Position numbers and translations under genes: made by a program. From positions 33,080,664 to 33,144,663 of the forward strand of contig CM074520.1 of assembly GCA_037379345.1 (NCBI GenBank): a stretch of DNA of 64,000 bases. Direction: 5' to 3'. The notes beneath the pieces are model-generated. The model worked only from the letters and a program-made list of their open reading frames with translations. It was not told the DNA's origin and made no database searches. Of the stretch, positions 101 through 24,200 are shown in pieces; position 1 is the first letter of the stretch, and each line of letters starts with the position of its first letter. The DNA is from Perna viridis. Its lineage: Eukaryota.

Positions 101-2083
101 ATTGTCTTCCATTGAAATGACGGTTATCATAGATCCGGAAGGAGATGGTGGTGACCTAAGCGATCCTCTGACTTCTGGATTATACTGTGGTCTTATTTCA
201 TTGGTCAGCGTTATAATGGAAATATCACTTTCGCAGGGGCTCACCAGACTTTCTTCTTCACTTCCGGTTTTAGAGTCCTTCTGTTTAAGTGAAAAACCCT
301 CCTTAAATATAAATAAAATACTCTCGTAAACAAACTTTTGTTTAAAATTGTTTCGGTTTAGACACATGTTTAAAAAGCTGGAAAATTTTTCAAATCGATT
401 GAGATGGATTTAAAAAAGTATCTGGTGCAGACAGGGTAACGAATATTACCCTTCTTCTGATAATTATCAGTTGAAATCAACTAATCGGCGCTCTGTAATT
501 TGTTCATGTGAAGACGGTGTATTTCCGATACACGGTCACCATTTTAGCAATACCTGGTCAGTTATCGTTTTCTTGTTTACTACAACCAAAATGGCGACCA
601 AACGTTTTGCGTCGCTTACGACAGACGATATACAAAACAAAAGTACCATAGAGGCAACACAAGGGTAAAAATTGAAACACACATCAGGAACATTAAAGAA
701 AATTATTGCTATATCGGGTATAAACTATTTTTTTTCTTTAAAAAAAAAACCCCAAAACAAAATCATCGATGCCGGGTGTAAGTTCGTTACAAAGTGATTG
801 AGTGACCTTGTACGGAATTCACCCTGGTCAGTAGATTCCATATCTGGCTCAGCTGTCCCTCGTCGGGTATAAAATATACTGACCAAGGTAAATTCCGTAC
901 ACGGCCACGACAGGGTAACTAATAATTCACGGTTCGGTTTGGGCAGGTTTCCTTGTGTTATAGATGTTACACTTTTATCGTTTTCAAAACAATTGAAAAA
1001 TCTTGTTGATACCGTTTGTCCCCCTGTAACTCGACTACGCCAAGCTATGTCCAATGCATGACTGTTGCTCTTCTCGCTTTCTTCCATGGCTCTAAGTTCT
1101 TCCTGAAAAAGCTTCTCTGTCTCTTCTGCTTCTGTAACCAGTGCCTGGTGTATTAAAATTAGATTTCAAATATCATCATGTGTGTAAATGATAAATATAG
1201 TCTATGATTTTACAATATTGATCTTTTTATATGTAACTGACTTGTTAAAGTTTGGGAAAGAGAACCTAAACCAGTTATATACTATTCATTCAAACGAGTG
1301 CCGAAGGTTGTTTAACAAGTGTGTATAGTTTTTTCTATTTCCTAAAATTGGACCAAAAATAGATAATAATTATTATTGTTTAAGTCATCACGTCTGAAGG
1401 TTATTTTACATAATTTTGGCTTTCATATTTGTATTTTTTTTCTTAGTGTAACTATATCAGTGTTTTATTCCCTTGGTATTTCTTACTGTATTACATGTAC
1501 ATACCAATTCTTTTGATTGGACTAAAATTCTTCTTATCTCCGGCGAAGCTGATTTTCGTCCTGTGAATCTATCAGATACCGGTTTCTGATTTAAGAAATC
1601 TTGCGAAGATACCATTTTTTGGTCCATGAGCGGTCCGGGTGACTTTGGGCTCTGGTTTTTGAATGCAACAGTGGCTGTGGTCTGACTTCGATCAATAATC
1701 TGAAATGTAAATAATTCTTGATTTGCTGTTTGCTGAAATCAAAGCACCTAATACCACTACCAATATGTAAACCTAGGAATGTTATGATGGTTACCCTTTC
1801 CCCTCATTTATATTGTTAATTTTATGGAAAAAATTAGCAATAACAAGCCTGAATCCCACTTTTTTCTGTACCCCCTCTCCAAAAGTTTTAGATCTGTATT
1901 TGTGATATTCATGTGGAACAATCGTGCGAAAAAAATACGTACCAACCCCTACTGCACATGCATTTAAATACAAGCTTAACTTACCGAATTTCTTTCCACT
2001 TTTGGTTCTTCCTTGACATAGCCATATTCCCAAAAATCTTCATCACTTTTGCTTGAATATACGCTCCATTTAGAAGCAGACAT
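101..2083 (-). CDS. Orphan family paralog A (uncharacterised protein), 3' end outside window; exons 2083-1985, 1699-1505, 1144-1013, 301-101
   Basis: The exons join in frame at phase-0 GT-AG junctions (99, 195, 132, 201 nt) with no stops: MSASKWSVYSSKSDEDFWEYGYVKEEPKVERNS|IIDRSQ...QSKEL|ALVTEAEETEKLFQEELRAM...GGQT|EGFSLKQ...SMITVISMEDN|gtatgt. Exon sizes are identical to paralog B. Confidence 0.8.
431..925 (+). mobile_element. Crypton-like (tyrosine recombinase transposon) non-autonomous relic in intron 3 of paralog A
   Basis: A 25-bp inverted repeat (809-833 vs 877-901, 2 mismatches) surrounds a CTCAGCTGTCCCTCGT loop. A short ORF start MATKRFASLTTDDIQNKST at 590 resembles Crypton N-termini. 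The segment is bounded by direct repeats ACAGGGTAAC(G/T)AATA. The family call is from recall. Confidence 0.45.
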
Positions 2084-2122
2084 CTTTGCTGTTAGAACGG
2101 CAACGTTTCAGTCTTTCAGGGT

Positions 2123-2169
2123 GACGTTACCACGGAAGTCGATTGAAACGTCACATATTCCATTGTGAC
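2123..2169 (-). promoter_or_regulatory. Conserved 47-bp promoter block of paralog A (TGACGT CRE-like plus GGTAAC RFX half-site)
   Basis: Same block as 12722-12768 and homologous to 22603-22649. It lies 39 nt upstream of the ATG. Confidence 0.6.
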
Positions 2170-3257
2170 TATGAGCTCTCAAGCAATCGGTGCATCCGCG
2201 GTCAAATCAGCAATGTTCGGAATCCCGATGTTGGCCGAGAAGTTCATTTTACCATTCACATTGTTCAGACGTTTGAAAATTATGTCCTCCTTTGCTGATG
2301 TCGCCGGTATTTTTGTCATTACCTTGTGGCTAAATAATATTTCGAATTCAGGATGCCATATTTTACTCTGCAAAAATACAATTAACCAAAACGTTAATAA
2401 ATAAACTACATAATTTAAAAGTATATATAATTACTATGAAAACCGATATTCCGAAATTATGAAATATTGAAATAAATTCAATTTAGGCAGAAACTAACCT
2501 GCAAAAATACAATTGAGGTGGTGTCAGCCACTACTCAAGTCAACGCCTTATAATGGAATAAATGTGAAGACGGGTTTAGATAGGGTTAGACCAAGTTAGT
2601 TCATGCAAGATGTGCTCGATTCGTCATCAGTCATTCATCAATGAATATGCAAATGATGTATGATGAATGAATGAACGATAAATATGGAAGAAAAATACAA
2701 ATAATAAATACGATAAACGTATACAAACACAAACAAGACATTTATTTTATATTTTCCGTGACGCCGACAAAAAAAAAACAAACATAATGGGGTAGGAGCG
2801 CCAGTGACATCTTGTATATATTTAAATCGTTCTATCGGTACTTGTGACCGAATATCTTGCGCAGTAGTACATTTTCTATTTCTCGTGACATCAGAAGGCC
2901 GGAGATGACAAATAAAAAATAAAACTTTGCTTAGGCGATGGCATAGGAATTTCGAAATGTATTTCTCGGAAATTATGCCAATCTGTGGTCTGGTGATATT
3001 GCTTTTGAAATAATTATTCTAATGTATGTGTCTCTGGAACTAGGTGCCGAAAAACTAAGCGCTTTAACATGACACACAGGTGTCTATGCGTTAACTTGTA
3101 GCAGTTGGGATATAAAGTGTAGGAACTGAGAAATGTAGCTAGTTGAAAGGGGACATGTATATTAGGACATGTTTATTTCAATGATGAATGATCTGCATGA
3201 TGAAAACAGATTTGATCAACGTGTCATAGTTTTCCATCCTCTTATGTCTACCTTGGA

Positions 3258-3430
3258 CTTGACTTTTTATGAGCAACTCGGTGGTTGTCTCTAGAAAAGC
3301 TGGTCCATGCTCCCTGTTTTTAGTGGAGTCCTAGTTGCTCATTACTTTTGTTACTTTCTATGTATCATTTTGGTGTGTCTGTTTTCCATTTTCATTTCCG
3401 CTAGAATCTTGGTTCCCTTGATTACTCTTT
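3258..3430 (+). mobile_element. Internally deleted copy of a short interspersed non-autonomous repeat
   Basis: TTGACTTTTTATGAGCAACTC...CCATGCTCCC...TTTTTAGTGGAGTCC...CTTGGTTCCCTTGATTACTCT is shared with 8733-8973 (plus) and 59735-59957 (minus). Confidence 0.75.
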
Positions 3431-4262
3431 GACAGACAGATTCGACCTGGAGGTCGATAAAATGAATTGAAAATTGAAAATTTACTAACTGGTGGGAAAG
3501 GCCAACTAGTAGTTAGAGGTGTAATATCCCTGTTTCGGGAACCATTCGCCTGCACATATGAGAAAGTAGTTTGAAATTACAAGAAGTAGTCCTAAGATTG
3601 CATCTCATTTTTCTCAGTTAAGTAGAGATATAAAAACTTAGTATCATCTGAAAGCTGAATGATTCAGCAGTAGTCTTAAAACTTCAGTTTCTTTTCTAAG
3701 TTGTAGGGTAAAATAATTCTGGACAAAAACTTTATGCCCTTGATATGACTAAATTTCAAAACGAAAGTATTGATTTCTGCATCTGGCACATTAACTTTAC
3801 GGTTCTTTCTTAGAGGCACTTAACTTAGAGGTATGTTGATATTTTTATAAGAGTTAAAATAAAGGGTGCCCATCATAATGAAACCCTCCAGCACCATCTG
3901 TACTTATGTAAAATTTGATATGAGCCTTATAAATAGCTGAATTTAACATATAAAGTAATGGGGATCTGACATGAAATGGTAGTATTACGCCTTGTAGTTC
4001 AATTACAATATGCAATATGTCAAAGAGTTTGTGTTCATTTCTCAAGGTGTTTCATGTAAACCGACATCAAACCTGAATATAACGCAAACTGGAGCACTGC
4101 AATGATGCATTGTGAATTCTGGTGTGTGCGTTTTTTGTTTTTGTTTTTTTAAATGTCCTTCGTAATCAGAATGATTAATTTAAAAATAAATCAAAGAATT
4201 CTATATGATAGTAACCATTCACAACAATAAGTTTGTCAGTGTTAAGATACAGTTGCGATCAC

Positions 4263-6449
4263 TTCTAACCTCTCTTAAATTCTGTCAGAATCTGTCAGGA
4301 TTTCTGTTCTACGACAGCAGACAGAACAGAAATCCTGACAGATCCTGACAGAGGCTGTCCTGGGTCAGGACACATTTTGCCCTATTCCCTGACAGATCCT
4401 GACAGAAACTGTCCTGGGTCGTGACAAAAGAAAATACGAAAAGCTGTTCTAAACTGTCATACCCCTGGACAGTTCCTGACATAAAATCTTTCTATTCCCT
4501 GTGACGTAATTTAGAACAGGAAGTCCGCGATTAATAAATGAAACTGTGTGACTTATGTGACTTAGCTTACCCGATTAAGAAACAAATCTTGATTTCAAAA
4601 TTTACATTGAATTTCCAGTTATATATAGAGAGCTCGTCGTGATCATCATCCCACAATCACTCGATCGTTGTTCATGTTCCAATTTTCGTCGATCACGGTC
4701 CAGTCACTCATCGTTCAAAAATTATCTTTGTTTACATGCATCATTTTTTTTACATTCTGTCATACACCTGTGATATTAATTAAGTCAAATTATTTAATTG
4801 TAAAATTAAAGGTCTATGTTTCAGTTCTAAGTGTAAAAGTCATAACAGATAACTTTCAGATGTTTGGTAATTCTCGCGAAGTTCAAGACTGACAAAGTAC
4901 TTTTTGAGTGAAAGCTACTTTTAATAACATAAGGGTCACAAATCATTCTAAAAATGTTAAAATTGACAATTTTGCATTAAATGGGTGACTGATACCTAAA
5001 TATTTCGGTCAAAATTCTCCTAAATGCCACTTTTTTAGCAACGAATATGAGTGATAACACTTCCAATTTCCCTACACAGTCTTATGTATAGAAAATGTAG
5101 AAACTAAAAATGTTAGTTTCAGACTGTGACACCATTATTTCAGTAAAAATTCTGCAAAATGTATGAGTGCAGGCAGTTTTATTTTTTATGAGGGTCTAAA
5201 ACTATTGACTAAAATGCTTATTTTTTTCAATACAACTATCATGTGGGTGACTGTGACTCATATATTTCTGTCAAAATTCTACAAAAATGTCATATTCCAG
5301 CATATGTACGTGCGGGAGCACTGTTAATTTCCATGAGTGTCTAAAATTAATGACTAAAATGCTAAATTTTTCAATATAAATATTATGTGGAGACTGTGAC
5401 ACATTAGTTTCAGTCAAAATTCTTCAAAAATGTCATATTCTTGCAAAATGTATGAGTGTGCACACTTTTAATTTGCTTGAGGGTCTAAAATTATTGACTA
5501 AAATGCTAATTATTTCAATATAACCATCAAATAGTGAATCTGACACATTAATTTGAGTCAAAATTCTTTAAAAATGTCATTTTCTTGCAAAACGTATGAG
5601 TGTGCACACTTTTAATTTGCTTGAGGGTCTAAAAATAATGACTGAAATGCTGAATTTATCAATATAATTATCATGTTTTTGGCTGTGACACATTTGTTTG
5701 AGTCAAAATATTTTTAAAAATCTAATTTTTGCAAAATTTATGAATGCGAGCACTTTTGATTTCTATGAGAGCATAAAATTATTGACTTAAATGCTATTTT
5801 TTTTGTAATATAACTACCATGTGGGTGACTGCGACTAATACATTTCGGTCAAAATTCTTCAAAATATCCCAATCTTTCAAATTGTATGAGTGTGAACACT
5901 TTAAAGTTCCATAAAGGTATAAAATTCTGTATAAACTGTTTGAAAATGTTAATATAAATAGGAAATCTGTATCATACCGGTGTCTAGATCTGCAACCAAA
6001 AAGAATTCAGTCCAAAAAGTCAGGGGCATAGCGAGTATGACAGGCAATAATTTTTGTTGGCACTGCATGCCATACGTAAAAGTCGGGTAAAAATTGAAAA
6101 AAAATCAAGTTTAAACATAGCAAGGCTTCCTTCCCGTCGTACGAATCGGGATTCGGGTGCTACACTTTTTTTTTCGTAATCACATACATGTACTGTATGT
6201 AATTCAGACAGAGAAGTATTCTCGAGCTAATGACTGTCAGAATCTATCAGGAAATCTTCTAATCCACGTATCTGTTCTACTTAGAACAGTTCCTGACAGG
6301 AGGGTGTCAGGACCCATGACAAATTATGACAGAGCTTGTCCGAAGTCCCGGCAGACCCTGACAAGGTGTTTCGCGGGTCAGAACAGTTTCTGACAATTTA
6401 GATCTGTTCTTTGACAGCGAATCCTGACAGGATCGAAGAGAGGTTTGAA
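4263..6449. mobile_element. About 2.2-kb non-autonomous TIR DNA transposon with an internal satellite
   Basis: The left end TTCTAACCTCTCTTAAATTCTGTCAGAATC is the imperfect inverse of the right end (reverse complement TTCAAACCTCTCTTCGATCCTGTCAGGATT). Many subterminal CTGACAG/CTGTCAG motifs occur at both ends. The element is absent from duplicate copy B. Confidence 0.75.
4900..5930. repeat. Tandem array, 144-bp period, about 7 diverged units
   Basis: GAGGGTCTAAAA-like anchors recur at about 5191, 5335, 5479, 5623 and 5767. Confidence 0.85.
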
Positions 6450-8374
6450 TTCGTTCCCCGAAATTTTCTTTTATATCCCATTTTTGAAATTTGACGATTG
6501 TCTGAGGTGTAAAAATTCAAATGATCGATATAAATTGATGCAGTACATGAGTACTTTGATAAATTCCAATAACACGAAAGATACAGATATCGAACGAAAA
6601 CATCTCAACACGACAACATAACAGGCTATGACATACTGTTTGGCTATCATTTCACGTTTTGATTCCAACCGTATATTGAAAAGGAAACCAAGCATTAAAC
6701 GATTAGCATACGTTTGAACTCGGCACTTTAGAGTTAAAATTTAATGAATCAAGTTTTTGCATAATTTATTTGAGCAAAATTTTAAGGTCAGACTTAAACC
6801 AATCAGAGCGAATTTCATTATTTCATTTTTTTTTCATGTGTAGCTTAGAAATTGCCTCAGGACTGTCTTCAGTACTGATCTCATGTAGATTCCAGAGCTC
6901 TATTCAGATCTCTCCAAGATGTCACGTTTGTTTTAACTTACCAAATTGGGTGTCTACCACGCTGAACCGAGAGCCGCAATTTTTTCATAAGATATCCAGT
7001 AGATATACAGTATTTGGAGAGAAACTGCATTGAATATGAATTTTCAAAATTCCAAATGACTCTTTTAAAGGTCATCTAAATATGTCAAAAAGATTTGTTT
7101 TATGATTTGCAATGCCATCGGAGGCGCAGCTTTTATTGTTCATGTACAACAAAATGTACTCGGCAAAATTCCCACGAGCTAAGGGTGACTCCCGTCACAA
7201 CTTTCATGATACATGTATATTACTAGCTACATGTAAATGTGCATTTGTATACTTGTATACTTTAAGCAAAGTGCAACAGTATAGCGCAAAGGAGGACCAG
7301 CTCGTACAACTTAAAGAGCGCGGTGTTTAAATCTTACAGTGGAAGTAAACCACCGATACATGTACAATCAGCTCAGCTAATAAAGCGCAGTGTTTGAATC
7401 TTACCACCGCTACTTTGGTAAAGAAATACAATTAATGCACAGTTGTGCATGACAAGCTATTTTAATTGTTTTTATAATATTATTGCTTTGATAAAAGACA
7501 GATCGACAACATTCATAGTTTTCATTTATTCCCATACATTAACAGGCAACTAAAAACGCTTCCTCCTTATAATTTTTACCCTCTCTCTCGTTGTATTTCT
7601 CCAAAAGCTTGTCCATTTGTAAATGAATTGCTCTTAAACTGGAAAATGCTGCTAGCAACAGCTTCTCTTCATGTACATGTATGTATGTGTGATGTTTTCT
7701 GTTAGGGAACGCCACGAACAACCACGAACATGCATGTGTCTAAAAAACTTTCCTTTTGGCACTCGAGAAAACAAACGCCAGGTGCCGACCTTGACAAGTT
7801 GAAAAATAGAAATTGAGCTGGATGGATTCCAAGCTGTGATAGACGTTTAGAATATGTGCATTTTTAATATCAACTTTTGACATTAATATTGTTACTTCTT
7901 AATTATCGACGAATCGTAGGTTTTACTAATATTTCACTTTTTTCTATTTACTAATAACATGCCTTTGTGAAAGACATTCAAATATATCCCATGACAGCCA
8001 AGCTTCTTAAAAAAGGAAAATATTTCTACCACGGTCGTGCTATTCATGTTTAATAAGGACACGCGTACTTTGTGAAAAACACTCTTCGGTTCATGTACTC
8101 CCAAACACTTTTCTATTCGTTAATAATTTGTTGTTCGGCGGTATTGTTGAATATTATGGAAACCAATAAAAACTCCAAAAAAATAATCTAAGGTTCTATA
8201 CATTATATGCCACTCATCCTGCACTTAAGTACATATATATGTATACACGTGTAACATGTACATGTACTAATGTATAAGCTTGTGTTTTGCAAATGAATCG
8301 TGTTGTAAAGCATAACCAACACACAGTCCGGTCATAATTTTCTAACTTTCTGTGCCTATGCATGTTGGCATATA

Positions 8375-8730
8375 ACTAGAGGCTCAAGAGAGCCTGAATC
8401 GCTCACTTGGCTAACCATTTGCTTATTTGAAAAACTTGAGGAATGAGACAGGCTAAGTTAAAATCAACTAAAATTATTCATAGCATTTTCATGACCTGAA
8501 GCAATACACTAAAGAACTAATATGCTTATTTTCATTCAATGATCTTAAATGGTTTTAGAGAAGAAGATTTTCAAAGTTATACATGTGAAAAAAAAAGAAC
8601 AAAACTGTTTTAGGGGTCGTAACTCCTACATTAGTCAATGAATGGTTTTGAAAATTTCGGCATAGGTCCTTCTCATGATGCTTAATAATTTTATCCTATG
8701 CCAGAAATTTGCTAAAGGCAACGGTTTTTG
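8375..8730 (+). mobile_element. Probable fragment of a non-autonomous DNA transposon (Kolobok-like end)
   Basis: Starts AACTAGAGGCTCAAGAGAGCCTGAATCGCTCAC and includes GTTTTAGAGAAGAAGATTTT, motifs I recall from common bivalve repeats. Not verified. Confidence 0.35.
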
Positions 8731-8732
8731 AG

Positions 8733-8973
8733 TTTGACTTTTTATGAGCAACTCTGCGGGTGTTTCTAGAAACGCAGAGGACGCTTACCCTACCGGTGCA
8801 CCTGATCCATGCTCCCAGTTTTTAGTGTAGTCTCCGAGTTGTTCATTTACTTTTGTTGCTCTGTATGTATTTTTAGTTACTTTATGTTCTTTGTTGTGTT
8901 TGTCTGTGTTTCCATGTCTGGTATTTGTCCCTGGATTGCATTCTTTTGATTTCCGCTGGAGTCTTGGTTCTCT
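8733..8973 (+). mobile_element. Short interspersed non-autonomous repeat (fullest copy in window)
   Basis: GAGGACGCTTACCCTACCGGTGCACCTGATCCATGCTCCCAGTTTTTAG core, with homologues at 3258-3430 and 59735-59957. Confidence 0.8.
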
Positions 8974-10213: not shown

Positions 10214-10616
10214 TTCCGAATCATACTAAAGTATTGGAACTACGAAAACAAATACCACTAGAAGTAATATGCTTTATTTAATCTAAAGGTACAAATCACA
10301 AATAGATACAAAATATAGTAACGTTTCTCATGACTAATAACACAAAATTGCAATGACGAAGTAAACAAAATGATACTCTGAATGAAAATAATATTTAATA
10401 GTAAAACAGTACATTAATATGACTGTTTCCAAACGAAGTTTCCCGCAGCATTTGTCATGCGTAGAAACCCAGCTTTTTTAATATTCCCTGACCTATAACT
10501 CCGATCCGACGACGGACGAGGCCATGCAGGATAAGGGCGCCAATTCTTTTCTTGAACATCGCCTTAGTATTCTGTTGATAAGCGGCGTAAGAGGAAACTA
10601 CTCAAGATTAATATGG

Positions 10617-12682
10617 TTAAATGCATGACAGGGCACCAATTCTTTTCCTGAAGTAGCGCCCAACTCTGCCGATCTGACGACGGATGATTCCGAATACGCC
10701 TAGTTTCTTCTCCTCTCTGAATGCGATTCTAGGTTTTGGTAGATCACCATGATACATCACGTCTCTGTTAGATCGGTTTTCGTTCCCTTCGATAATCTTT
10801 GGTGTAAAAAAATAAAGGAAAACATGTAGAATACATTTTGTAGTTGAATTTCTTTCGTTTTCAAGTTCGTTAAAAACAAAGTATCACAAAAAATCGTAAG
10901 AGTAAAATTATTCGTAAGTTATGACGTCACAACACTTTGATTTACTATGACGTCATAACTTACGACAAATTTTACACTTACGATTTTTTGTGAAAAGGAC
11001 CACAGATCTATGTTAAAAAGTACGTTTTTATTTGACTTGTCTTTAATTTACTGATGAGTGAGTTTTGAATTTGTCAAGGTATTCTAAATTCAACAAACTA
11101 TTTCACCTTTATCTGTGCATAGTCAAGTGATTGTTTTCTCGTGCAGATTAATGCATTCACTTGCATTTGTTACATACATTGTCTTCCATTGAAATGACTG
11201 TTATCATTGACCCGGAAGGAGATGGTGGTGACATAAGCGATCCTCTGACTTCTGGATTATACTGTGGTCTTATTTCATTTGTCAGCGTTATAATGGAAAT
11301 ATCGCTTTCGCATGGGCTCACCAGACTTTCTTCTTCACTTCCGGTTTTAGAGTCCTTCTGTTTAAGTGAAGAACCCTCCTTAAATATAAATGATATACTT
11401 TCGTAAACAAATTTTTGTTTAAAATTGTTTCGGTTTAGACAATTGTTTAAAAAGCTGGAAAAACTTTCAAATCGATTGAGATGGATTTCAAAAAGTATTT
11501 GGTTCAGACAGGGTAACGAATTATTCAGGGTTCGGTTTGGACAGGTTTCCCTGTATTATAGATGTTACACTTTTATCGTTTTCAAAGCAATTGCAAAATC
11601 TTGTTTATACCATTTGTCCCCCTGTAACTTGACTACGCCAAGCTATGTCCAATGCATGACTGTTGCTCTTCTCGCTTTCTTCCATGGCTCTAAGTTCTTC
11701 CTGGAAAAGCTTCTCTGTCTCTTCTGCTTCTGTAACCTGTACCTGGTGTATTAAAATTAGATTTCAAATATCATCATGTGTGTGTAAATGATAAATATAG
11801 TCTATGATTTTACAATATTTATCTTTTTATATGTAACTGACTTGTTAAGGTTTGGGAAAGAGAACCTAAACCAGTTATATACTATTCATTCAAACGAGTG
11901 CCGAATGTTGTTTAACATGTGTGTATAGCTTTTTCTATTTCCTAAAATTGGACCAAAAATAGATAATAATTATTATTGTTTTAAGTCATCACGTCTGAAG
12001 AAGGTTATTTTACATAATTTTGGCTTTCATATTTGTATTTTTTTTCTTAGTGTAACTATATCAGTCTTTTATTCCCTTGGTATTTCTTACTGTATTACAT
12101 GTACATACCAATTCTTTTGATTGCACCAAAATTCTTCTTATCTCCGGCGAAGCTGATTTCAGTCCCGTGAATCTTTCAGATACCAGTTTCTGATCCAAGA
12201 CATCTTGCGAAGATACCTCTTTTTGGTTCATGAACGGTCCGGGTGACATTGGTCTCTGGTTTTTGAACGCAGCAATGGTTGTGACCTGACTTCGATCAAT
12301 AATCTGAAATATAAATAATTCTTGATTTGCTGTTTGCTGAAATCAAAACTCTTAATACCACAACTCATACATGCATGCAAAGGGAATGTTATGATGGTTA
12401 CCCGCTCCCCTCATTTGTATTTTTTTAATTTTGTGCAAAAAATTAGCAATAACAGCTTGAATCTCACTTTTTCTGTACCCCTTTCCAATAGTGTACTTGT
12501 GGTATTCATGTCGAATAATCGTGTGAAAAAAAAATACGTACCATCCCCTACTGCCCATGCATTTAAATACAAGTTAAACTTACCGAATTTTTTTCCACTT
12601 TTGGTTCTTCCTTGACATAGCCATATTCCCAAAAATCTTCATCACTTTTGCTTGAATATACGCTCCATTTAGGAACAGACAT
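10617..12682 (-). CDS. Orphan family paralog B, complete, 268 aa; exons 12682-12584, 12303-12109, 11742-11611, 11378-11178, 10796-10617
   Basis: Five exons (99, 195, 132, 201, 180 nt) with all phase-0 GT-AG introns, from ATG to TAA with no internal stop. The protein ends ...EEKKLGVFGIIRRQIGRVGRYFRKRIGALSCI*. Motifs and splice positions are shared with paralog C. Confidence 0.82.
10884..10993. mobile_element. Palindromic MITE in intron 4 of paralog B
   Basis: TCACAAAAAATCGTAAGAGTAAAATT..TCGTAAGTTATGACGTCA is mirrored by TGACGTCATAACTTACGA..AATTTTACACTTACGATTTTTTGTGA. Confidence 0.75.
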
Positions 12683-14340
12683 CGTTGCTATTAGAACGGC
12701 AACGTTTCAGTCTTTCTGGACGACGTTACCACGGAAGTCGATTGAAACGTCACATATTCCATTGTGACTTTGAGCTCTTAAACAATCGATGCATCCGCGG
12801 TCAAATCGGCAATGTTCGGAATCCCGATGTTGGCCGAGAAGTTGCGATTTACCTCTCAAGTTCATTTTACCATTCACATTGTTCAGACATTTGAAAATTA
12901 TGTCCCTCCTTTTCCGACACAAAAAAAAACAAACATAATAGGGTAGGAGTGTCAGTGACATCTTATATATTATATCAAAATCGTTCTGTCGGTACTGGCG
13001 ACTGCAATCTCCTGTGCAGTGAGTCAAATTTTTATACGACCCTATAGCTAGCGGAGTGATACGCAGTGAACCCAGGAGCGGCTATACATCTGCATAGGAG
13101 ATTGAGATTTTTGTTAAAACCTTCTAACGCAGGCGCAGATTGAACATATGTTTTAGCACAATGTTGTATTTACCCACACATTTCCATTTTAAATTCCAAT
13201 GACACGAATGATTTAGAAATCGAACGAAAAGATCAGGCTATGACATACTGTTTGGCTATTATTCCTCATTTTTATTCCAACCATATATTGAAAAGGAAAC
13301 TAATCATCAAACGATCAGTATTAGTTTGAATTCGGCACTTTAAAATTCAATGAATTAAGTATGTTTTTTTTTTCCACGATTGAGTAAATTTTACTATCAG
13401 GCTTAAGCCTTTTTTCTGAACCAATCAGAACGTATTTCTATTATTTCAAATATTTTTCCGACACAGTCGGTATAGTTTCGCTTTTTACCCTTTGACCTTA
13501 CAGACGCTCTTCCATGGAAACGCATTTCTCCTGACCTAAATTCTGTTTCTCGATTGGCCAAATACTGATAACTTAGTGGCGTTCGAAAAACTGTATCGGA
13601 AATTAAAATTGCGTGTCATGAGTTATTTTCTGAATGAAATGTAGAAAATTATAAGTAAAAAGAACAAATTTTACTGCGTCGGCTATCTTTTTTTAAAGAC
13701 AGTACTTGTTTATACTTGTTTGTAGCTTAGAAATTGCCTCAAGACTTTCTTCAATACTGATCTCATCTCAAGCAGATTTCAGAGTTTTGTTCAGATCTCT
13801 CCAAGATGTCAAGTCTGTTTGTTTGAACTTACCAAATTGGGTGCCAACTAAGCTGAACTGAGAGCCGCCATCTCGCTGTAAGATATATCTAGTGAATATA
13901 AAGTATTTGGAGAGAAACTGCACTGAATGTGAATTTTCAAAATTCCAAATGACCATTTTAAAGGTCACCTAAATATGTCAACAAGATTATTTTAACGCTT
14001 CCTCCCTATAATTTTTGCCCTCTCCCTCTCTTCTTGTATTTCTCCAAAAGCTTGTCCATTTGTTAATCAGTTACTCTTAATCTGGAAAATGCTGCTATCA
14101 ACAACATCTCTTCATGTATGTGTAATATTTTCTATTAGGGAACGCCACGAACAACCATGAAAATGTGTCTAAAAAATCTTACTATTTGGCACTCGAGAAA
14201 ACAAAGGCCGTCGATCTTAACAAGTTGCAAAATAGAAATTGAGCTGAATAAATTTCAAGCATACTGCTTTGGAGCTTTGACAGACGTTTAGAATATGTTC
14301 ATTCTTAATATCAACTTCTGACATTAATATTGTTACTTTT
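11080..14340. repeat. Copy B of the local segmental duplication
   Basis: Direct alignment to 1-7900. Homology ends near 14340, before the TCAF 3' end. Confidence 0.9.
12722..12768 (-). promoter_or_regulatory. Conserved 47-bp promoter block of paralog B
   Basis: The minus strand reads GTCACAATGGAATATGTGACGTTTCAATCGACTTCCGTGGTAACGTC, 36/47 ungapped identity to 22603-22649. Confidence 0.6.
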
Positions 14341-15044: not shown

Positions 15045-18000
15045 TCAGATCAAGCCACAAGTCGATTGGTCTTCTGACGATACATCGATATTATCAAGGG
15101 CACGATCCTCGTCGTCTTTAGAAATATCAATGGTATATATTTCCCTTATGGCCATTGCTCTTTCCTTACCAATATCATTCGTAATATCGTCATCTGGTAG
15201 AAACATTGGGAACTTGCTTATTTCATCAAATTCTTTGATAGGCCATCCCCAAAAATCAAATAGTGGACTTAAGTTCTTTTTCACTACTTCCGAAAAAGTA
15301 GTCACCCACAGATTTATTTTATCCTCTTTTGTCTTTGGGTGTGAATCTTTTGGAAGGTCATTGTATATTCTGAATACTTTCTTGTAAGAATCCCATCCAA
15401 AATCTCGAGCCAGCTGTGCGTATACAAACAATGCTACTCCTGGTTTAGAGCTCCATGTCTTAAAATCTGCACCTCCCTGAAAGAAATCGTTTAGAAGTTT
15501 TGAGAATGTTTGATAAAGCTTACATTTTGCTGTCACGACCGACTGGGTGTACATATGACAATGCAAATTTACGCAAAGGCCAATGTAAAACAAAGGTCTA
15601 TGTTAAAACCGGTCCAAACTAAACCGTTTCTCATAGATTTTGCAAGACTTTAGTCTTTGGTTTAATATACTTCGATAATTTTTTTAATATATTACAGGAC
15701 TTTAGAAAAAAATGATAAGCCTCAGTCTGTTTATTGCATAGCCCAGTTTATGCTGTGTTCAGATTAGACAGAATTCACCTTAATCAAAATTCTAACTCCT
15801 ATTTACAAGTACATTGCACATGTACATATAGATACAAGTAGAAGAAGCCGTGACAGTAGCAATTGCAATTTAAGTGTAAGTGTTCGTAAGAATCAGACAA
15901 AATGGGAAAATCAGAAACATACATATCAAAACCCCACCGATCTGACAATGTAATATTACTCAAGGATGCTTTCTCTATTTGAAAAGACCATTATTTGATC
16001 TCTGCATCACTGGCTTTGCTGATAAAAATCTATCAGTATTACAACTATGCAATTCAAAGAAATACTGGAAGTACCCGGAAGTAGTTTTAGCTAACTGCAA
16101 CCCATTATAAAATGCTTATATCAAATACCGTACCTCAAAGAATGATTTAACTCCCTTTAACTGTTTTTGGAGCCACGGATGGAGCCACGGTTTTATTCCA
16201 CAAATTTTGTCCATTGCATGTAGGGTAAATATATTGCATGTCACCTCGCCAGTACCCTGCCACGTCCAAAGGCCATTTTGAAAATTATGACCAATCTCGT
16301 GAAACAACCCCCATCGTCCCTCCTTCATGATATTTTCTTTTTGGAACTGAAAAATGTTCGGTCGGTTCTGAAATAAAACAAAAAAATGTTGTTTTTTTTT
16401 CGCAACACAATATCAACTTATCACATATAAAAACTCTCAACAGTAGTCTTTATGAGAAGATAATGACTTATTGACAAATTTCCACATGAACAAAATTAAA
16501 CCATTTGTAAGTAAAAAAAAACTTGTAAGGCGTTACCAAGGCATGTATCAAAGTACCAGTCCGTTTCCAGACGGAAAAGATACTCTGCATTTAAAGTAAA
16601 GAACGGGAGCCTTTTAGGGCCATGCTATTTACTTGTTATAATTTGTTATAACAGATAGGTAATTTGTTACTACAGATTATTTAATTTGATTATAACGGAT
16701 TACTAATTTGTTATTACAAGTTAGTAATTAGTTAATTTGTTATATCAAATTATTAACTTGATACATGTACTTGTTAAATCAAATCACTAATTAGTCATAT
16801 CAAATTAAATAATTTGTTATGACAAATTAATAACCTATTATAAAAGGCTTCCGTACTATAGCATTTTCCTTTGGTATGTATGTAAATTTAACTCCAATTT
16901 GAAACCATTCCTTCAATTCTTCATCTTATCTTTATCAACTGTACCACGATACTTATTACGCAGCGCCACACACTGAAGAAAGTAGCTCTAAGACACTTAG
17001 TCTAATATTGCAAACAAATTGTTCTCCGTGCCATTCCTTAGAAAACATGATTTCTGCGATTGAAAGTCATTGTACAGCTTAGGCAGGATCTCTAAAAAAA
17101 ACCTAATATGACCATAAGTTTATGTATTTGTAGAAAACAATGTCGGTCGCGTATCAATGTACACTTAATATTGTCATGATAGATCTTGCCCCCATAATGG
17201 CCATGCTGGAAGACGATCATTATTCTTGTTTACCTTCAACATATTCAGACGTACTAAACTCATGAAGTCCACAATTACTTGTAGACAGGACCTGATGGAG
17301 TCTCTTGATGTCACACTACCTTTTTTACCTAGGCAACATTTTTTTTTTATTTTTCAGATTTATTCTCCTTTCGCTATGAGAAATTATATTTGGAACGATT
17401 TTGACCATAGAGACTAAATCTGAATAATACAAAAAAATATTGCCTATGTAAATAGAGGGAGTGACATCAAGAGGCTTCTTCCGAATCCGTTTACAAGTAT
17501 CTTTGATTTTAATTCAACGTACCTGGTCTGTAACATCCAAATGGGTCACGATTGGATAACCGCTGTGCATGTAACCAGCTGACGGTTGAATATCTGAAAC
17601 TACCCACTGTCCCCGACCATTAGATGCGTCTTTACCTAAGAGATCAATGTAAGTTTCGACTACGGCATCCCATAATTTCATAGTTTCTGTTAGGTCTGAC
17701 AAGTCTCGAACTGATCTAGAAGGTAAGGTAAAAGCAATTCTTTTACCGATGACATCGCACCAGATTCCAGGGTTTTTAGAGTTTTCTCCCCATTTTTCTG
17801 CTGTTTCGTAGGTAAACATTGGAGAACGGACTACGTTGTGCATGTTTATCTTGATTTGATCATCCGGCCCAGCTTTAGAGCACCTTATGTAAATTAATCC
17901 TCCGAAGGGGCTGCTGACTCTTTTAGGTACATTGCATTCTGTTTTGGTTGGACCGAGATGTGTTTTCGATATGATCATAGGCCACCTTTCGAATGCCTTG

Positions 18001-20600
18001 GTTGCTTTCTTATTTTGAAGGTTATCAGTGTGGGCTCCAATGTAAAGCTTCCAGGGGATTCGATTTCCCTCCCATGAAACCTCCAAAGTAGTTCCAGCAG
18101 GAAGATAGTATCCGGTTGCTTGACGTCTCTTAAGGCCGTCGGAATAAAGTTCTACCGAGATATTTTCTAATTCTGAGTTTTTGTCAAATGTTCCCGGGAA
18201 ATCGTTGATACCGTCTGCTATGACTTGATTACCCATTATGCCTTGTCTCACCATCACGTGACCTTGCAGGATCGCTGCGTTTTTACGATGCATGCACTTA
18301 ATTGGTGTATTTTTGACAGGCACGTGATCGTTATTTGGCGATAGGTGGTGTATGAGATCCATAAAAGTCGATTCATGCCGGTTAAAGAGTTCATCAGGTA
18401 AATGACACACGTGATCTACTATTGTGTCATACAAATTCTCGTTTACTTCTTGAGTTTTTATGGCTTCGCTTAGACTAGACAGCTTACTCAAATGAGCCAG
18501 GTTATCAGCCATGAGAACTTTATTGCCGGTGTCTTTCTTAAAGTGCATTTTCCCAGCAAACGCCATTCCTATTTTAGACAATATTTGAGTGAGTGGAAGG
18601 CAAGATACTGGAACTTTTTTTAATTGAGAAACTCCCCATGGGCAGCAACCACAAATGAGACCACCACCACCTTCAATCCATTCAAATAGCTGGTTCCTGG
18701 CTTCTGTTGTCAGCTCTGGCCAACCGGACCAGGTCAAAACTTTGCTGTCTGCAGGAAGTTTGTCTAATGTTCCGATGTAGCTCCCAAATTTTTGAATTTT
18801 AGTCCCGTCGTCTGTTCCCTTGGTGATCCATTTGATGACATTTCTATTGAATCTCTCGTTTCCAAATTTATTCCTTTCAAAATTTTCAAAATCACCCAGT
18901 AAACTGTTGTGTGAAAAGACCACAACCCTTCCTTTTCCAAGTTCGGCTGAAAAATTAATAAAATTTAATTTGAAAATAGAGATTTTTAAGTGATTCTTGG
19001 TAAGCACCAAACTATCTTACTAATTTGTCATTTTCAAATCAATACTACAAGAAGATCCCTGTACATGTAACACCAATTTGAGTTCTTTTGAAATTAGGGA
19101 AATGCACAAATGCACTTTCTATACACTCCAAGGGCGATTCTTCAATTTTATCAGAGAGAGATTCGTAAAAATATTGTATTTTAAAAAGAGGTCAGAGTAT
19201 CATTTGCTTATTTAGTCAAAGTTTCGCCAAAAAAAAATACAGGAAGTTTCCAAAAAGGGGGGTTACAACCGCTGCACCCTTTGGAACTGCACTCATTGCA
19301 CAAATAGCAATATTATCTGAATTAATCAATTAGAATAAAATTTAAGTAGATCAGAGCAGGTGTCTCATTTCTAGAATAAATATTGTAAGATAGAAAATAC
19401 AAGTATTTTTCGAAAATGAAGTATTTCTGAAATGCCTGAATTCTTGAAATCTCAAAACATAAGAAATATTACTGACTTCTTATGACAAGTGCCTACCAAG
19501 TTAAAAATACCGGTACTTAAGATATCAGTCATTTTAAAACTACCAAAGAAAGTTTTCACCCACAGATGTGTCAAAAAGCCAAAAATGGATATTTTTTAAT
19601 CTCAAGAAGAGATTTTATGTTAATTTAAATGTACATTATACTTACCACAGGAGTCACTAATAACGCGAACATATTCTATATTTATTTTATTGTTAATGTG
19701 ATAAGTATAATGTACAAAATTAATATAAAATAAAAATACGCCTTGTAAATATCCCATTTTCCCTTCACTTCGCTTCAAACAGCTATAAATTAATGTCGAT
19801 GTGAGAACGATACAACAATGAACTAAAATGTTTTCAAATTATGATTGTTTACCATAAAATTTGCATTGCGAATATACAAATGCTACATGTTTATACTGCA
19901 TACAATAATTCTTTCCACATTTTTTCTTTAAAATTTACAAACTTTGACACGGTACAGTTTGCTGTACGAAACATCGCAACTAGCGGATTATCGTTAAACG
20001 TGTTCTATAAATCTTTAAGATATATTCACATGTATATGTAAGATCTATGATAACAAGGATTTGAGTTATTTTCAGATCGAAGGGAAATGTTTCCATCAAA
20101 GCTGCACTTTGGCTTTCATGACAGCTTCACTCTTGACCGAGTCCTTAAATTAGATTTTCTACGCGCGAGCTTTAGTGAGCATGTTAAAACTTCAATTTTA
20201 TCACAGAGAGTAGAGAAAGTAAAAAATCGTTTTCTTCTATGCAATCTGATAACATCTTTGAAAACGTAATCGTCGGAAACTCACGGATGATTACGCTTGC
20301 TTCTTTTTTCACCACATGTATAAGAAGCGTAAATAACAGTGGGATTCCGACGACCAGAAAATGTACAGTGACATGAAACCTCTTCCGATGATAACAAATC
20401 AAATGCACCTAATTTAATTGATTGATTAGGGTGAAGGTAATAAGCATACAAAATGACATACCTACGGCGCATAGAACCTGTCCTCTTGTATTAGCTATTA
20501 CCGCAGTGGAAGATTCCCCACTCACTAATATGATACCAGGAATACCACCAAAGTTCACTTCGACAACTCCATCCAGTATTTCCGTCCGCCATTCGTCCAT
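15045..20600 (-). CDS. TCAF: TRPM8 channel-associated factor homolog / peptidase M60-like zinc metallopeptidase, 742 aa; exons 20600-20462, 18946-17523, 16367-16134, 15476-15045
   Basis: The N-terminus GQVLCAVA-ELGKGRVVVFSH and WIEGGGGLICG are TCAF-like. M60 motifs: ATGYYLPAG, SPFGGLIY, DIQPSAGYMHSGYPI, WGLFHEIGHNFQ and GEVTCNIF. Intron phases (1, 0, 0) are consistent and the total is 2229 nt. A splice acceptor at 20616 implies an upstream non-coding exon. Confidence 0.92.
15870..16023 (+). repeat. About 150-bp dispersed repeat, second copy at about 27045-27200
   Basis: TTAAGTGTAAGTGTT...AAAACCCCACC(G/A)ATCTGACAATGTAATA...TCTCTGCATCACT(G/A)GCTTTGC occurs at both sites. Confidence 0.8.
16603..16855. 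mobile_element. Small TIR element with an internal about 21-bp minisatellite in TCAF intron 2
   Basis: The ends ACGGGAGCCTTTTA and TAAAAGGCTTCCGT are inverted. The interior is repeated AATTTGTTATAACAGATT-like units. Confidence 0.65.
17278..17497. mobile_element. MITE with about 44-bp imperfect TIRs in TCAF intron 2
   Basis: CTTGTAGACAGG...AGTCTCTTGATGTCACACT versus AGTGACATCAAGAGGCT...CCGTTTACAAG. Confidence 0.65.
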
Positions 20601-22602
20601 TTCCTTTCAAGATTCTGTATGATATGAAAACAGAATAAAGCAAGATTATAATGATAATAAAAACTTATATACCTTATTGTTTTAAATATTTTGAATAAAC
20701 TTGTTTAAATGTTAATACAAGCAACTTAAACTATAAATATGTTGATGTTCATTTGACTATTATAGACCCATCAGAACCGTATTCCGGGATTATCAGAATC
20801 CGTATTCCGGGATTATCACGTAAAAGTTTATTTTCATATACGGATGCAACACTAAATTATTATCTCATATATGAGGAATTTGTACTTCTAATTTGTTTAC
20901 TTTTTAATCTCTGTCTCTGATTTTAAAATATTGCATATCAGAGAAAAGATTTGAAGTATAATGCGCAGGAATGTTATATTGTCATGCAATACGGCTGAGA
21001 ATCATAAGTATTTAAGAGGCTGTCCATGTAAAAATCAGGCAGATCCTATGGTTGGCATATGGTAAATTTTACCCTACTGAATTTTTGTTCCAATTAATGT
21101 TTATATCATATGGTTCATCAAATAGTATAAAGATTTTTAATGCGACAACAGATGACTCGGAAAACGACATTAAAGTTCACAAACAAAGCAACCCATATTT
21201 TGCTAAGGTAAAAAAACAAAGAGTTTTCTCCCTTTTTGAATGAATTTCAATGTTTACTATGTATTTTTTCTCTTTAACCATTGCAGTTAATAAAAAAAAC
21301 AATGTTATTATGGGAAAAAGAATTCATTTGATATTGGGGATGGAAAGTTATAGAATGGCATATTTTTATTTCATTTTAGTTATAAATTTTGATTCCAACA
21401 ATCGAAAAGAATACCAACTATTTCCTCCAAAGTTGCTTGCCTTGCTACCGAGGCATTAAATTCTATTTACGGCGTACCCTGTAACCTAAAATCCTGTATC
21501 ACGAGTAACAACTAAAGATAATATTTTATTCAGGCTTTCAACATAAATTAATTAAAAAAATCAAACGTAACCACTTTGTAACAATTCATTACAACATCAA
21601 TATGAAGCTTCACTTTACTGCTAATCTGAACCATCAAGCACGGAACAAGCAAGAAACGATTTAAGGTAGTGCTAGGTCAATTCTTGAAATTGGTCACATT
21701 TTGCTGAAGTAAAGCTTATTTGAGGCTTTGATTTTTTTGGTTTGTTGTTGTTGTTGTTGGTTTTTTTATAAAGAAGTACAATTTTTTTTTATAATCTTGG
21801 ATGTGGGGTCAACCGTGATTAAAAATGAAACTATTTTAGCGTTTTAGTACAGATCACAAGTGTTACCAAAACTAACAGCCAAATACTGTATGTTTTATGA
21901 ATATCAGACACTAAAAATCTCCCACAGAAGGAAAGCAGGCATGGAGGAGATGATAATATTAACATCTTTTTTCGATTCATTTTCTCGCAATTTCAGCTCC
22001 TTAAGTTCGTATGAAATTATGCATCTGAAAATCAATCACTTAAATGCAGAGGCGAGAAATACGGTAGGGGAGTGAAACATTCCGGATGCCATTCTTCATT
22101 TTAATATCTGTCTAGGTATAACATTTAAACAATATATCTACGGACGTTCAACTTACAATTTTATAAGTTTTACAAAATTAAACCTTGTCAATTCTGTGTT
22201 TGAAAGTACGGAACAATGGGCCTAAATATAACAGCACCCTAATCATGAAAGTTTAACTTCTTTAAGCACGGTATTTTTTTTAAGTGGGCCAACATGAGTC
22301 GGACAGAAAATGTAGTCACAGTCAAACTGGGTTGGGCGGAGCATAATAACAACACACACACCTTGTTTTTCTTGTCTACACTTCCAGGTGCATATTCACA
22401 GGGGACACCCCGGCGTTCGACCATTCTTAAATTGGGATTTTTTGGGGGGGAATGGAATCTTGTTTTTGTTTTTTTGTTCGTTTGTTTGTTTTTTTTTTTA
22501 AATTCTAACCCAATATTTTTCCCTCGGTCGTAACTCTAGTTACATCCATAACCTGAAATCTTTGATCCACCCTGACTCCGTTTGATGGGGCTATCATGAC
22601 CA

Positions 22603-22649
22603 GTCACAGTCGAAATTATGACGTTTCGCCCGACTCCCATAGTAACGTC
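22603..22649 (+). promoter_or_regulatory. Conserved 47-bp promoter block of paralog C
   Basis: GTCACAGTCGAAATTATGACGTTTCGCCCGACTCCCATAGTAACGTC lies 35 nt upstream of ATG 22685 and is homologous to the A/B blocks. Confidence 0.6.
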
Positions 22650-22684
22650 CCTTTGCACTTAGAAGGTCATTCCGTTTGTGCAAC

Positions 22685-24200
22685 ATGTCTGGATTGCACG
22701 GAAATTTCTCCGGTGATATTGCAGGCGTTATGTCTAGCCCTAGTGAAGAATTTTGGGATTCAGGATACTCAGAAGACTCCCATAAATATGAACAATTTTC
22801 GGTGAGTCTTCATATCTTTTAAACTACAAGAAATACAAGGGTTTTATTTATTTACTATTTTATAATGATTCAGAATAAAATTCTCCTTTGTATTCATCAT
22901 TAAGTTTTGGATTATCTCTGATCCTTTCACACCCCCCAAAAAAGTTGTGTTGTTCTCCTTACAAGTACACATGCTGTACATGTATTTGTAATTTTTACTT
23001 AGGAAACTCTGATCTACAAAGATTTCAGCGCAAGCGAGATAAATCTCTTCAACAACGAAGAAGAAAACGAGAAACTTTTTCAAGAGGAAATGGACGCCAT
23101 GATGAGAGAAAGAGGGGAAATAAATGATGAAACGTACATATATAACACGGATGAGCAAATTATATACGCGGTGAGTATATTGAAAAGTTTTAAAGCGTTT
23201 TTTTCTACAACAGTATTTTCGACGTTGCAATCTTTAAATCGCGTTCAAGCAGATAAAGATGCCAGTAACTAGGCGACAACTAGAATTATTTTAACCGCTA
23301 TAAAATATCCATCATGTTAAAATATTTAAAAACAAGGCGCAACACTTTAGGAAAAAGGATAGTATGATCGAAATTACCACGGAAACGAAATCGCTTCTTT
23401 AATTTGAAGTTTGTGTATGTACATTAATATATGTATTAACAAAATTTAAAACTTTCTCCAGGACAAAAAAGAAAGACCCGACGACACAAGCAGATTATTA
23501 TCCCCAACAAGCTTCAGAACATTAACCCCCGACCAAGACTTTGTGATCCCTTCGGCTAGTTTGGTCCCTGCAGTGCCATCTGAGGTTGATCACGTGGTCC
23601 ATGCAAACACATCAGACCTTGTCGGTTCAAGATCACAAGAATCCATCGCTTCTCGGAAGGGGTTTTACATTGATCACTTGGCCAGTACCACATTAGACCA
23701 TTACGGTTCAAGATCACAAGAATCCATCCCTTCTGGCAAGGAGTTTGATATTGATCCCTCGGTCAATAAAACACCAGATACTGTCAATTCAAGATCAAGA
23801 GACCTGTTGCCTTCTAGGTCGGATTCACTGCTTACAGTCGTTTCAATGGAGGAGCAGGTATGAACATTGTAGTCAAATTATAGATTTAACTTATACAAAT
23901 GTTCTGTAATGTTTTGTTCTAACGGTTCGGATTAAAAACATACAGCTATGAAATGAAATAAAATCTAAACCATTTTTTTTTGTAATATTTCAATTGACAT
24001 TCAAATGTATAATTTTTTAATCGGTGATTGTGTATATTATTTTTCAGACAAAACACTCAGTAGATGTACCTAGACTAATAGGCAGTCCTTTTATCATCAG
24101 CAAGAAACCATCCGTTATCACTCGGGCTTTTACACAAATTCGAAGATTTGGACGATTCATCAGGAAAAAGGCGAAGAAATTGTCATGTACTAGCTCATAG
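22685..24200 (+). CDS. Orphan family paralog C, complete, 277 aa; exons 22685-22801, 23003-23170, 23462-23857, 24048-24200
   Basis: Four exons (117, 168, 396, 153 nt) with phase-0 GT-AG introns (donors gtgagt, gtgagt, gtatga), from ATG to TAG without stops. MSGLHG...SSPSEEFWDSGYSEDSHKYEQFS|ETLIY...EEENEKLFQEEMDAM...|...SLLTVVSMEEQ|...QIRRFGRFIRKKAKKLSCTSS*. ATTAAA lies at about 24263. Confidence 0.85.

What the first reader, a model, noticed from the sequence alone, without database searches (positions are those of the whole stretch)
101..24200. Hidden three-member orphan gene family bracketing the TCAF gene
Seen: splicing short exons yields three intact genes, A (101-2083 minus, partial), B (10617-12682 minus, 268 aa) and C (22685-24200 plus, 277 aa). 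B and C have little obvious similarity overall but keep four motifs in order, two of them ending exactly at a shared splice donor. The motif pairs are SKSDEDFWEYGY..K.E..S|gt vs SPSEEFWDSGY..K.E..S|gt; EETEKLFQEELRAM vs EENEKLFQEEMDAM; PSPSGSMITVISMEDN|gtatg vs PSRSDSLLTVVSMEEQ|gtatg; and KK..V......QI.R.GR..RK....LSC. All introns are phase 0. I recognise no domain or signal peptide. Inference: a lineage-restricted, mostly disordered adaptor family built from short linear motifs. An old inverted duplication (C vs B) was followed by a recent tandem one (A vs B), and more copies may lie left of the window.
Basis: partly seen in the sequence, partly recalled or inferred. Interest (0 to 1): 0.9.

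Follow-up and report, generated by a model that had tools for sequence, protein, structure and literature searches.

The report
Unannotated mussel-lineage disordered protein family
The three small spliced genes are real and related, but they belong to a larger, so far undescribed family of acidic, disordered proteins with a positively charged tail helix, found only in this bivalve genome and of unknown function.

Summary
All three introns of gene C are confirmed by spliced transcripts in three runs. A stray contig shows that a paralog left of the window (C') is spliced at two of the matching junctions. B-type and C-type are homologous exon by exon (z 4.7-8.5 against shuffles for B/D vs C; C' is weaker on one exon; mismatched exon pairs -1.5 to 1.1). 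dN/dS is 0.29-0.47.

"Three-member" is wrong. Chromosome C10 holds five intact genes (D, C', A, B, C) and one pseudogene within about 200 kb. At least six more distant genes at two other loci share the tail exon (hhalign P 7e-9).

No Pfam, PDB, paper or Atlas match was found. The tail profile found nothing among 1.84 billion protein representatives, and the sister database, built from the same source collection, holds Mytilus proteomes. So "orphan" is not refuted, but no other mollusc genome could be searched.

Function is inferred only: an acidic, Ser-rich disordered body with short motifs, tethered by a cationic amphipathic C-terminal helix. All five genes share a nearly invariant 47-nt promoter block. 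B-type transcription was not tested. This is a solid gene-finding result, but an ordinary kind of discovery for a mollusc genome.

The parts
101..2083 (-). Gene A, B-type, 268 aa. Exons in the window: 1985-2083, 1505-1699, 1013-1144, 101-301. The tail exon lies left of the window at G000:C10:33080325-33080501.
   Evidence: Aligned to B with no indel in any exon, while the introns carry indels. Splice sites are kept. dN/dS against B is 0.47.
10617..12682 (-). Gene B, B-type, 268 aa. Exons: 12584-12682 (FW..GY motif), 12109-12303, 11611-11742 (central acidic helix), 11178-11378 (ends in TV.SME), 10617-10796 (cationic tail helix and stop).
   Evidence: All introns are GT-AG and phase 0. dN/dS against D is 0.37. 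No direct RNA test was possible.
22685..24200 (+). Gene C, C-type, 277 aa. Exons: 22685-22801, 23003-23170, 23462-23857 (contains a 27-28-aa tandem repeat), 24048-24200.
   Evidence: All three junctions are seen in transcript contigs (X1, X2). One is also seen in 4 raw RNA-seq reads (X11). Depth is confined to the exons.
12722..12768 (-). Conserved promoter block of B: a CRE-like half site and an X-box-like half site, 40-85 nt before the ATG.
   Evidence: 5-way alignment of the upstream regions of A, B, D, C and C'.
2123..2169 (-). The same promoter block upstream of A.
22603..22649 (+). The same promoter block upstream of C.
15045..19010 (-). Context only, not a family member: the two large exons of the TCAF-like (M60-like peptidase) gene lying between B and C.
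   Evidence: Pfam PF17291 and PF13402. Mytilus TCAF hits at 46% and 43% identity.

Best explanation
These are real protein-coding genes of a young, fast-evolving and so far undescribed family.

Shown:
- Five intact paralogs (D, C', A, B, C) and one pseudogene lie within about 200 kb. They arose by tandem and inverted segmental duplication around TCAF and beta-tubulin genes.
- Two of them (C, C') are transcribed and spliced as modelled.
- All five are under moderate purifying selection.
- All five keep a nearly invariant 47-nt promoter block.
- At least six more distant genes at two other loci share the tail exon.

Inferred from sequence: the proteins are 264-305 aa, acidic and Ser-rich, and probably mostly disordered. 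They carry four conserved modules in fixed order:
1. an N-terminal acidic FW..GY motif;
2. an acidic alpha-helix (E-KLFQEE..AM);
3. a hydrophobic-then-acidic TV.SME motif;
4. a 24-residue cationic amphipathic C-terminal helix. Q, R, G, R and R are invariant in it, as is a Lys ten residues upstream, and in the B/C group a Cys lies 2-4 residues from the end.

Most likely mechanism (inference): the tail helix docks the protein on an acidic surface, possibly helped by acylation of the Cys. That surface could be the inner membrane leaflet or a calmodulin-like partner. The disordered acidic body then presents short linear motifs to partners, so the protein acts as a small adaptor or regulator. The shared promoter suggests that the paralogs are expressed together.
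For: Gene reality:
- Spliced junctions 22801|23003, 23170|23462 and 23857|24048 appear in X1 and X2 contigs and in X11 raw reads, with depth only on exons.
- X2 contig 4 carries all 8 C'-specific bases. Its overhang equals the end of C' exon 2 plus the start of C' exon 3.
- Reading frames and GT-AG sites are intact in all five genes.
- dN/dS is 0.29-0.47 at dS up to 0.45.

Homology:
- Exon-wise z is 4.7-8.5 for B/D vs C, with flat controls.
- Own-genome searches with single exons and with exon profiles find exactly these loci.
- The F/G-type tail matches the B/C tail by hhalign (probability 96%, P 7e-9).

Modules:
- AlphaFold2 predicts a helix at residues 34-57 of the B tail exon (pLDDT about 60-73).
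- It predicts a helix at residues 5-41 of the central exon (mean pLDDT 75, 92 over the motif).
- The tail has a hydrophobic moment of 0.76-0.81 and net charge +6 over 18 residues. Only 0.5-2% of shuffles reach this.
- The exons before the tail have net charge -11 (B) and -25 (C). The tail exons have +8 and +12.

Promoter: the block is nearly invariant across A, B, D, C and C'.
Against: No experiment or partner prediction supports any function.
- Disorder is judged from composition only.
- The Cys is not at a fixed distance from the end, and the F/G-type tails lack it. Lipidation therefore cannot be the general anchor.
- B-type genes (A, B, D) have no direct RNA evidence here.
- The tail model's pLDDT is only moderate.
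- The joined full-length proteins were neither searched nor folded. A fold or homology that needs the whole chain could have been missed.
Confidence: 0.6

Rival explanations
1. The tail is an IQ-like calmodulin-binding helix, and the proteins are Ca2+/calmodulin-regulated or calmodulin-buffering factors, in the manner of neuromodulin or PEP-19.
For: The invariant tail residues Q, G and R stand at relative positions 0, +5 and +9, as in the IQ consensus. They sit in a basic amphipathic helix.
Against: The hydrophobic residue before the Q and the basic residue at +4 are missing. Pfam's IQ model gave no match even at E <= 10. Many basic amphipathic helices look like this.
Confidence: 0.15
2. This is a ciliary or sperm-cell gene battery. 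The shared promoter block is an RFX (X-box) plus CREB/CREM site, and the proteins act in cilia or flagella.
For: A block 40-85 nt before the ATG is nearly invariant in five paralogs whose proteins are only about 35-40% identical. It holds TGACGT and CC-N(1-3)-RGTAAC. F/G-type genes have TGACGTC beside GTAACG in the opposite orientation.
Against: Only one X-box half site fits the consensus. Such short patterns are common by chance. The tissue of the RNA runs is not known to me. Of two raw-read RNA runs of the species, one held a few reads and the other none.
Confidence: 0.12
3. The proteins are precursors of cationic, antimicrobial-like peptides released from the C-terminus.
For: The tail resembles cathelicidin-like cationic amphipathic helices in charge and hydrophobic moment. 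Bivalves have many such peptides (general knowledge).
Against: The N-termini, read by eye, have no hydrophobic signal-like segment. There is no dibasic cleavage site at a conserved place before the helix. The acidic body carries its own conserved motifs.
Confidence: 0.05
4. These are diverged members of an already known family that exon-by-exon searches cannot recognise.
For: Only single exons of 33-159 aa could be searched. Short, fast-evolving pieces have little power. The nearest annotated genomes (Mytilus) are distant: TCAF is 46% identical.
Against: - No Pfam match on any exon.
- Only a chance-level PDB match on the one exon searched, B's tail.
- No hit for the tail profile in 1.84 billion representatives, while own-genome members score 73-112 bits.
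- No paper holds the motifs.
- No family exon within 10 kb of two Mytilus trossulus TCAF genes.
Confidence: 0.08

Closest known systems
IQ-motif calmodulin-binding peptides (Pfam PF00612; neuromodulin/GAP-43, PCP4)
   Same: Small, largely disordered proteins whose one conserved element is a basic amphipathic helix, with Q, G and R at relative positions 0, +5 and +9.
   Different: No hydrophobic residue before the Q, a hydrophobic rather than basic residue at +4, and no Pfam match. The acidic N-terminal motifs have no counterpart.
Polybasic-plus-lipid membrane anchors (paralemmin, K-Ras4A-type C-termini, MARCKS effector domain)
   Same: A C-terminal cationic stretch, with a Cys close to the end in the B/C group. 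The rest of the protein is disordered and acidic.
   Different: Cys is at -4 (a CaaX-like position) only in C. It is at -3 in C' and at -2 in A, B and D, and is absent in the F/G-type. No sequence similarity was found.
Taxonomically restricted, tandemly duplicated gene families of bivalves (general class)
   Same: A clustered, quickly diverging, intron-bearing family with no homolog in annotated proteomes.
   Different: Here the paralogs keep a nearly invariant promoter block and four ordered motifs. That points to a conserved, specific role rather than drift.

Membership tests
Any Pfam-A family | A match to a curated profile at or near the gathering score | tested here: not met
   All 9 exons of B and C were scanned at E <= 10. 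The only match was a chance-level Vac17 hit (13 bits against a cut-off of 25.8).
IQ calmodulin-binding motif (PF00612) | [FILV]Q-x3-[RK]G-x3-[RK] in a basic helix | tested here: not met
   Q, G(+5) and R(+9) are invariant. The residue before Q is R, T or K, and position +4 is V or F. There was no Pfam hit.
CaaX-box prenylated proteins | Cys exactly four residues from the C-terminus | tested here: not met
   This is true only of C. C' has Cys at -3, and A, B and D at -2. F/G-type tails have no Cys.
Secreted cationic peptide precursors | An N-terminal signal peptide | tested here: not met
   The first exons are polar and acidic, with no hydrophobic stretch. This was judged by inspection only; no predictor was run.
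Solved structures (PDB) | Sequence similarity of the tail exon to any solved chain | tested here: not met
   The best match has E = 1.2 and is unrelated. Only B's tail exon was searched.
Same family, B-type versus C-type | Collinear, significant similarity of matching exons, with shared intron phase | tested here: met
   For B or D against C, z is 4.7-8.5 on all four exon classes. Against C', three classes hold (z 4.2-9.5) and the TV.SME exon does not (z 0.1 and 1.9). Controls are flat. All introns are phase 0.
Same superfamily, F/G-type genes versus B/C-type | Homology beyond the tail exon | tested here: inconclusive
   Tail: hhalign probability 96%, P 7e-9. Central helix: P 1e-3 over 17 columns. 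First exon: no similarity.

The most novel reading that the evidence does not exclude
A lineage-specific superfamily of about a dozen genes encodes a new class of disordered adaptors. Its universally conserved element is an IQ-like cationic helix. The five B/C-type genes are driven by a shared CRE plus X-box-like promoter. That would make them a previously unseen component of bivalve ciliated or sperm cells, born and expanded after the split from Mytilus.
Probability: 0.12. Interest if true: 0.55.

Novelty: new variant of a known kind. Interest (0 to 1): 0.33.

Why it matters
The result adds a set of real, expressed genes to an apparently unannotated bivalve genome: neither C nor any tail-bearing family protein turned up in the protein databases searched. 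It shows that motif-level reading of raw DNA can recover small multi-exon genes that domain-based annotation would leave nameless.

The family is a compact case for studying how young, disordered proteins evolve. Four short motifs and a promoter block stay fixed while everything else drifts. Without a function, though, it is one of many taxon-restricted families in molluscs.

Tried and rejected
Searches that found nothing:
- Pfam on every exon of B and C.
- PDB sequence search with B's tail exon.
- Profile of seven tail exons against 1.84 billion protein representatives: 0 hits.
- The 159-aa exon of C' against 5.8 billion proteins: only a genomic ORF fragment of C itself from a Logan contig.
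- ESM Atlas with the tail: no usable hit.
- Full-text paper search for six motif strings: 0 papers.
- Synteny test: the 10-kb flanks of two Mytilus trossulus TCAF genes hold no family exon (best E about 0.6-2).

Other points:
- PP1-binding RVxF motif: present in the B-type (tail exon) and the F/G-type (previous exon), but not at one aligned position, and absent in the C-type. Rejected as a family feature.
- FFAT-like reading of the FW motif: considered by eye only. The B-type has Tyr where a small residue is needed. Left as an untested idea.
- The bacterial promoter/terminator scan is irrelevant to a eukaryote and was ignored.

Not done:
- The spliced proteins were never joined. All searches and folds were exon by exon, by reference. 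So no full-length homology search, fold or Foldseek comparison was made.
It was redone from references.
Full report
**Place**

The window is G000:C10:33080664-33144663 of a 723-Mb assembly in 46 contigs. It has no N. The best annotated relatives of its TCAF-like gene are Mytilus trossulus and M. galloprovincialis proteins, at only 46% and 43% identity. I take it as a bivalve, probably mytilid, but not close to Mytilus.

**Observation**

I rebuilt the models by hand from the sequence.

- B (minus): 12584-12682, 12109-12303, 11611-11742, 11178-11378, 10617-10796. That is 268 aa.
- C (plus): 22685-22801, 23003-23170, 23462-23857, 24048-24200. That is 277 aa.
- A (minus): 1985-2083, 1505-1699, 1013-1144, 101-301. 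Its tail exon lies just left of the window.

All exon lengths are multiples of three, and all introns are GT..AG. C has four exons and B has five; B exon 2 has no counterpart in C. The gene between B and C is TCAF-like (Pfam M60-like_N and Peptidase_M60).

**Is it transcribed?**

One run search and one read-laying run were allowed, and I spent both on C. Runs of the same species label and of a second label hold parts of C. Laid on 22400-24500, the transcript contigs of X1 and X2 and the raw RNA-seq reads of X11 cover only the four exons. They show exactly the three predicted joints, all GT..AG: 22801|23003, 23170|23462 and 23857|24048. One 677-nt contig runs through exons 2, 3 and 4.

A second X2 contig differs from the window at eight places. 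All eight are the bases of the paralog C'. The contig's unaligned end equals the last 11 nt of C' exon 2 plus the first 15 nt of C' exon 3. So C' is also transcribed and spliced at the homologous sites. The B-type genes could not be tested.

**Is it one family, and how large?**

Matching exons of B or D against C score z 4.7-8.5 above 2000 shuffles. Against C' three exon classes hold (z 4.2-9.5), but the TV.SME exon does not (z 0.1 and 1.9). The twelve mismatched exon pairs score z -1.5 to 1.1.

Six-frame searches of the whole genome, with single exons and with exon profiles, find the following:

| Copy | Type | Position relative to the window | State |
|---|---|---|---|
| D | B-type, plus strand | 27-29 kb left | intact, 264 aa |
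| C' | C-type, minus strand | 9-10 kb left | intact, 305 aa |
| A | B-type, minus strand | straddles the left edge | intact, 268 aa |
| B | B-type, minus strand | inside | intact, 268 aa |
| C | C-type, plus strand | inside | intact, 277 aa |
| E | C-like | about 175 kb left | stops in two exons: a pseudogene |

D, C' and A all keep their frames and splice sites.

Selection and age:

| Pair | dN/dS | dS |
|---|---|---|
| A-B | 0.47 | 0.12 |
| B-D | 0.37 | 0.41 |
| C-C' | 0.29 | 0.45 |

A and B have no indel in any exon, while their introns have many.

The left block also holds a second beta-tubulin gene and a TCAF remnant, in inverted order relative to the window. The history is therefore an inverted segmental duplication followed by a recent tandem one.

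**A wider superfamily**

The tail profile also hits seven more places:

- on C10 at 32.52-32.56 Mb, four complete tandem genes and one fragment;
- on C4 at 50.21 Mb, one complete gene;
- on C4 at 47.41 Mb, a copy with the last two exons in the fetched stretch.

These genes have five exons, again all phase 0. Their tail is homologous to the B/C tail (hhalign probability 96%, P 7e-9). Their acidic helix exon is only weakly similar (P 1e-3), and their first exon is not similar. I count them as probable distant relatives.

**What the proteins look like**

The exons before the tail are polar, Ser-rich and acidic. Their net charge is -11 in B and -25 in C. The tail exons carry +8 and +12.

AlphaFold2 on exon alignments gives two helices:

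- residues 5-41 of the central exon (mean pLDDT 75, 92 over the KLFQEE motif);
- residues 34-57 of the tail exon (pLDDT about 60-73).

The best 18-residue window of the tail has a hydrophobic moment of 0.76-0.81 and net charge +6. Only 0.5-2% of shuffles reach this. Across all three subfamilies the tail exon keeps K, Q, R, G, R and R invariant. The B/C group adds L-S-C close to the end.

**Comparison with what is known**

- No Pfam family matches any exon.
- The PDB search (B's tail exon only) gave only a chance-level match, E 1.2.
- No paper holds the motif strings.
- The Atlas gave no usable hit.
- The tail profile finds nothing among 1.84 billion representatives. The members in this genome score 73-112 bits with the same profile.
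- The sister protein database, built from the same source collection, demonstrably holds Mytilus proteomes.
- The 159-aa exon of C' finds only a genomic ORF fragment of C.
- Two Mytilus trossulus TCAF loci carry no family exon within 10 kb.

The tail shares Q, G and R spacing with the IQ motif, but it fails two defining positions and the Pfam model. Cys is at the CaaX position only in C. The family is therefore unassigned.

**Limits**

- Exons of 33-159 aa have little reach.
- No other mollusc genome was available.

"Orphan" is unrefuted rather than shown.

**Mechanism**

What is shown: the genes exist, two are spliced as modelled, they are under purifying selection, and they share motifs and a promoter block.

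What is inferred: the cationic amphipathic tail docks on an acidic surface, either a membrane (perhaps with acylation of the Cys) or a calmodulin-like protein. The disordered acidic body then offers the FW..GY, KLFQEE and TV.SME motifs to partners.

I give the whole statement 0.6. The gene-family part stands at about 0.9 and the mechanism at about 0.3.

**Promoter**

A 47-nt block lies 40-85 nt before the ATG. It is nearly invariant in A, B, D, C and C', whose proteins are only about 35-40% identical between the two types. It holds TGACGT and an X-box-like half site. This is a lead towards CREB/RFX control and ciliated or germ cells. The patterns are short, and I could not test expression by tissue.

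**Verdict**

But taxon-restricted, tandemly duplicated families of unknown function are common in molluscs, so interest is moderate to low until a function or a wider distribution is shown.

Noticed in passing
G000:C10:32520000-32562000 (L027, L028, L023, L029, L030); G000:C4:50208598-50211635 (L031); G000:C4:47411832-47412005 (L008): A second gene family (F/G-type). On C10 there are four complete tandem five-exon genes and one fragment. On C4 there are a further complete gene and a copy with the last two exons. They share the cationic tail exon with the B/C family, and perhaps the acidic helix. Their first exon is different, and KRVRF stands at the end of the fourth exon.
   Followed up: partly
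window 12722-12768 (-), 2123-2169 (-), 22603-22649 (+); L020:508-560 (+); L022:1430-1480 (-): A promoter block is nearly invariant among all five paralogs. It holds TGACGT and CC-N(1-3)-RGTAAC-GTC. It is better conserved than the coding sequence.
   Followed up: partly
window 10455-10571 (-); L006:1683-1754 (+): Just after the stop of B, and also after the stop of D, lies a second, partial copy of the tail-helix coding sequence. It is a relic older than the B/D split, or an alternative last exon. RNA was not checked.
   Followed up: partly
window 23586-23797 (+); L022:211-687 (-): The long exon of C holds a tandem repeat with a unit of 27-28 aa (GSRSQESI...). C' has one unit more (159 aa against 132 aa).
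   Followed up: partly
G000:C10:32906810-32909000 (L011, L016, L025): A degenerate C-like copy (E) about 175 kb left of the window. It has a TAG in the helix exon and a TGA inside the tail helix: a pseudogene.
   Followed up: partly
L021:627-1439 (+) and window 28808-29620 (-); L022:2197-2286 (+): The beta-tubulin gene is duplicated in inverted orientation together with C/C'. A 30-aa TCAF remnant (90% identical) lies beside C'.
   Followed up: partly
window 10885-10995: In the last intron of B there is a perfect-looking inverted repeat of about 45 nt per arm, around a TGACGTCA core. It is probably a small MITE-like insertion.
   Followed up: no
window 5105-5960 and 50865-52740: Two tandem-repeat arrays with internally diverged units (65-76% identity between copies) appeared in the self-comparison of the window.
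   Followed up: no
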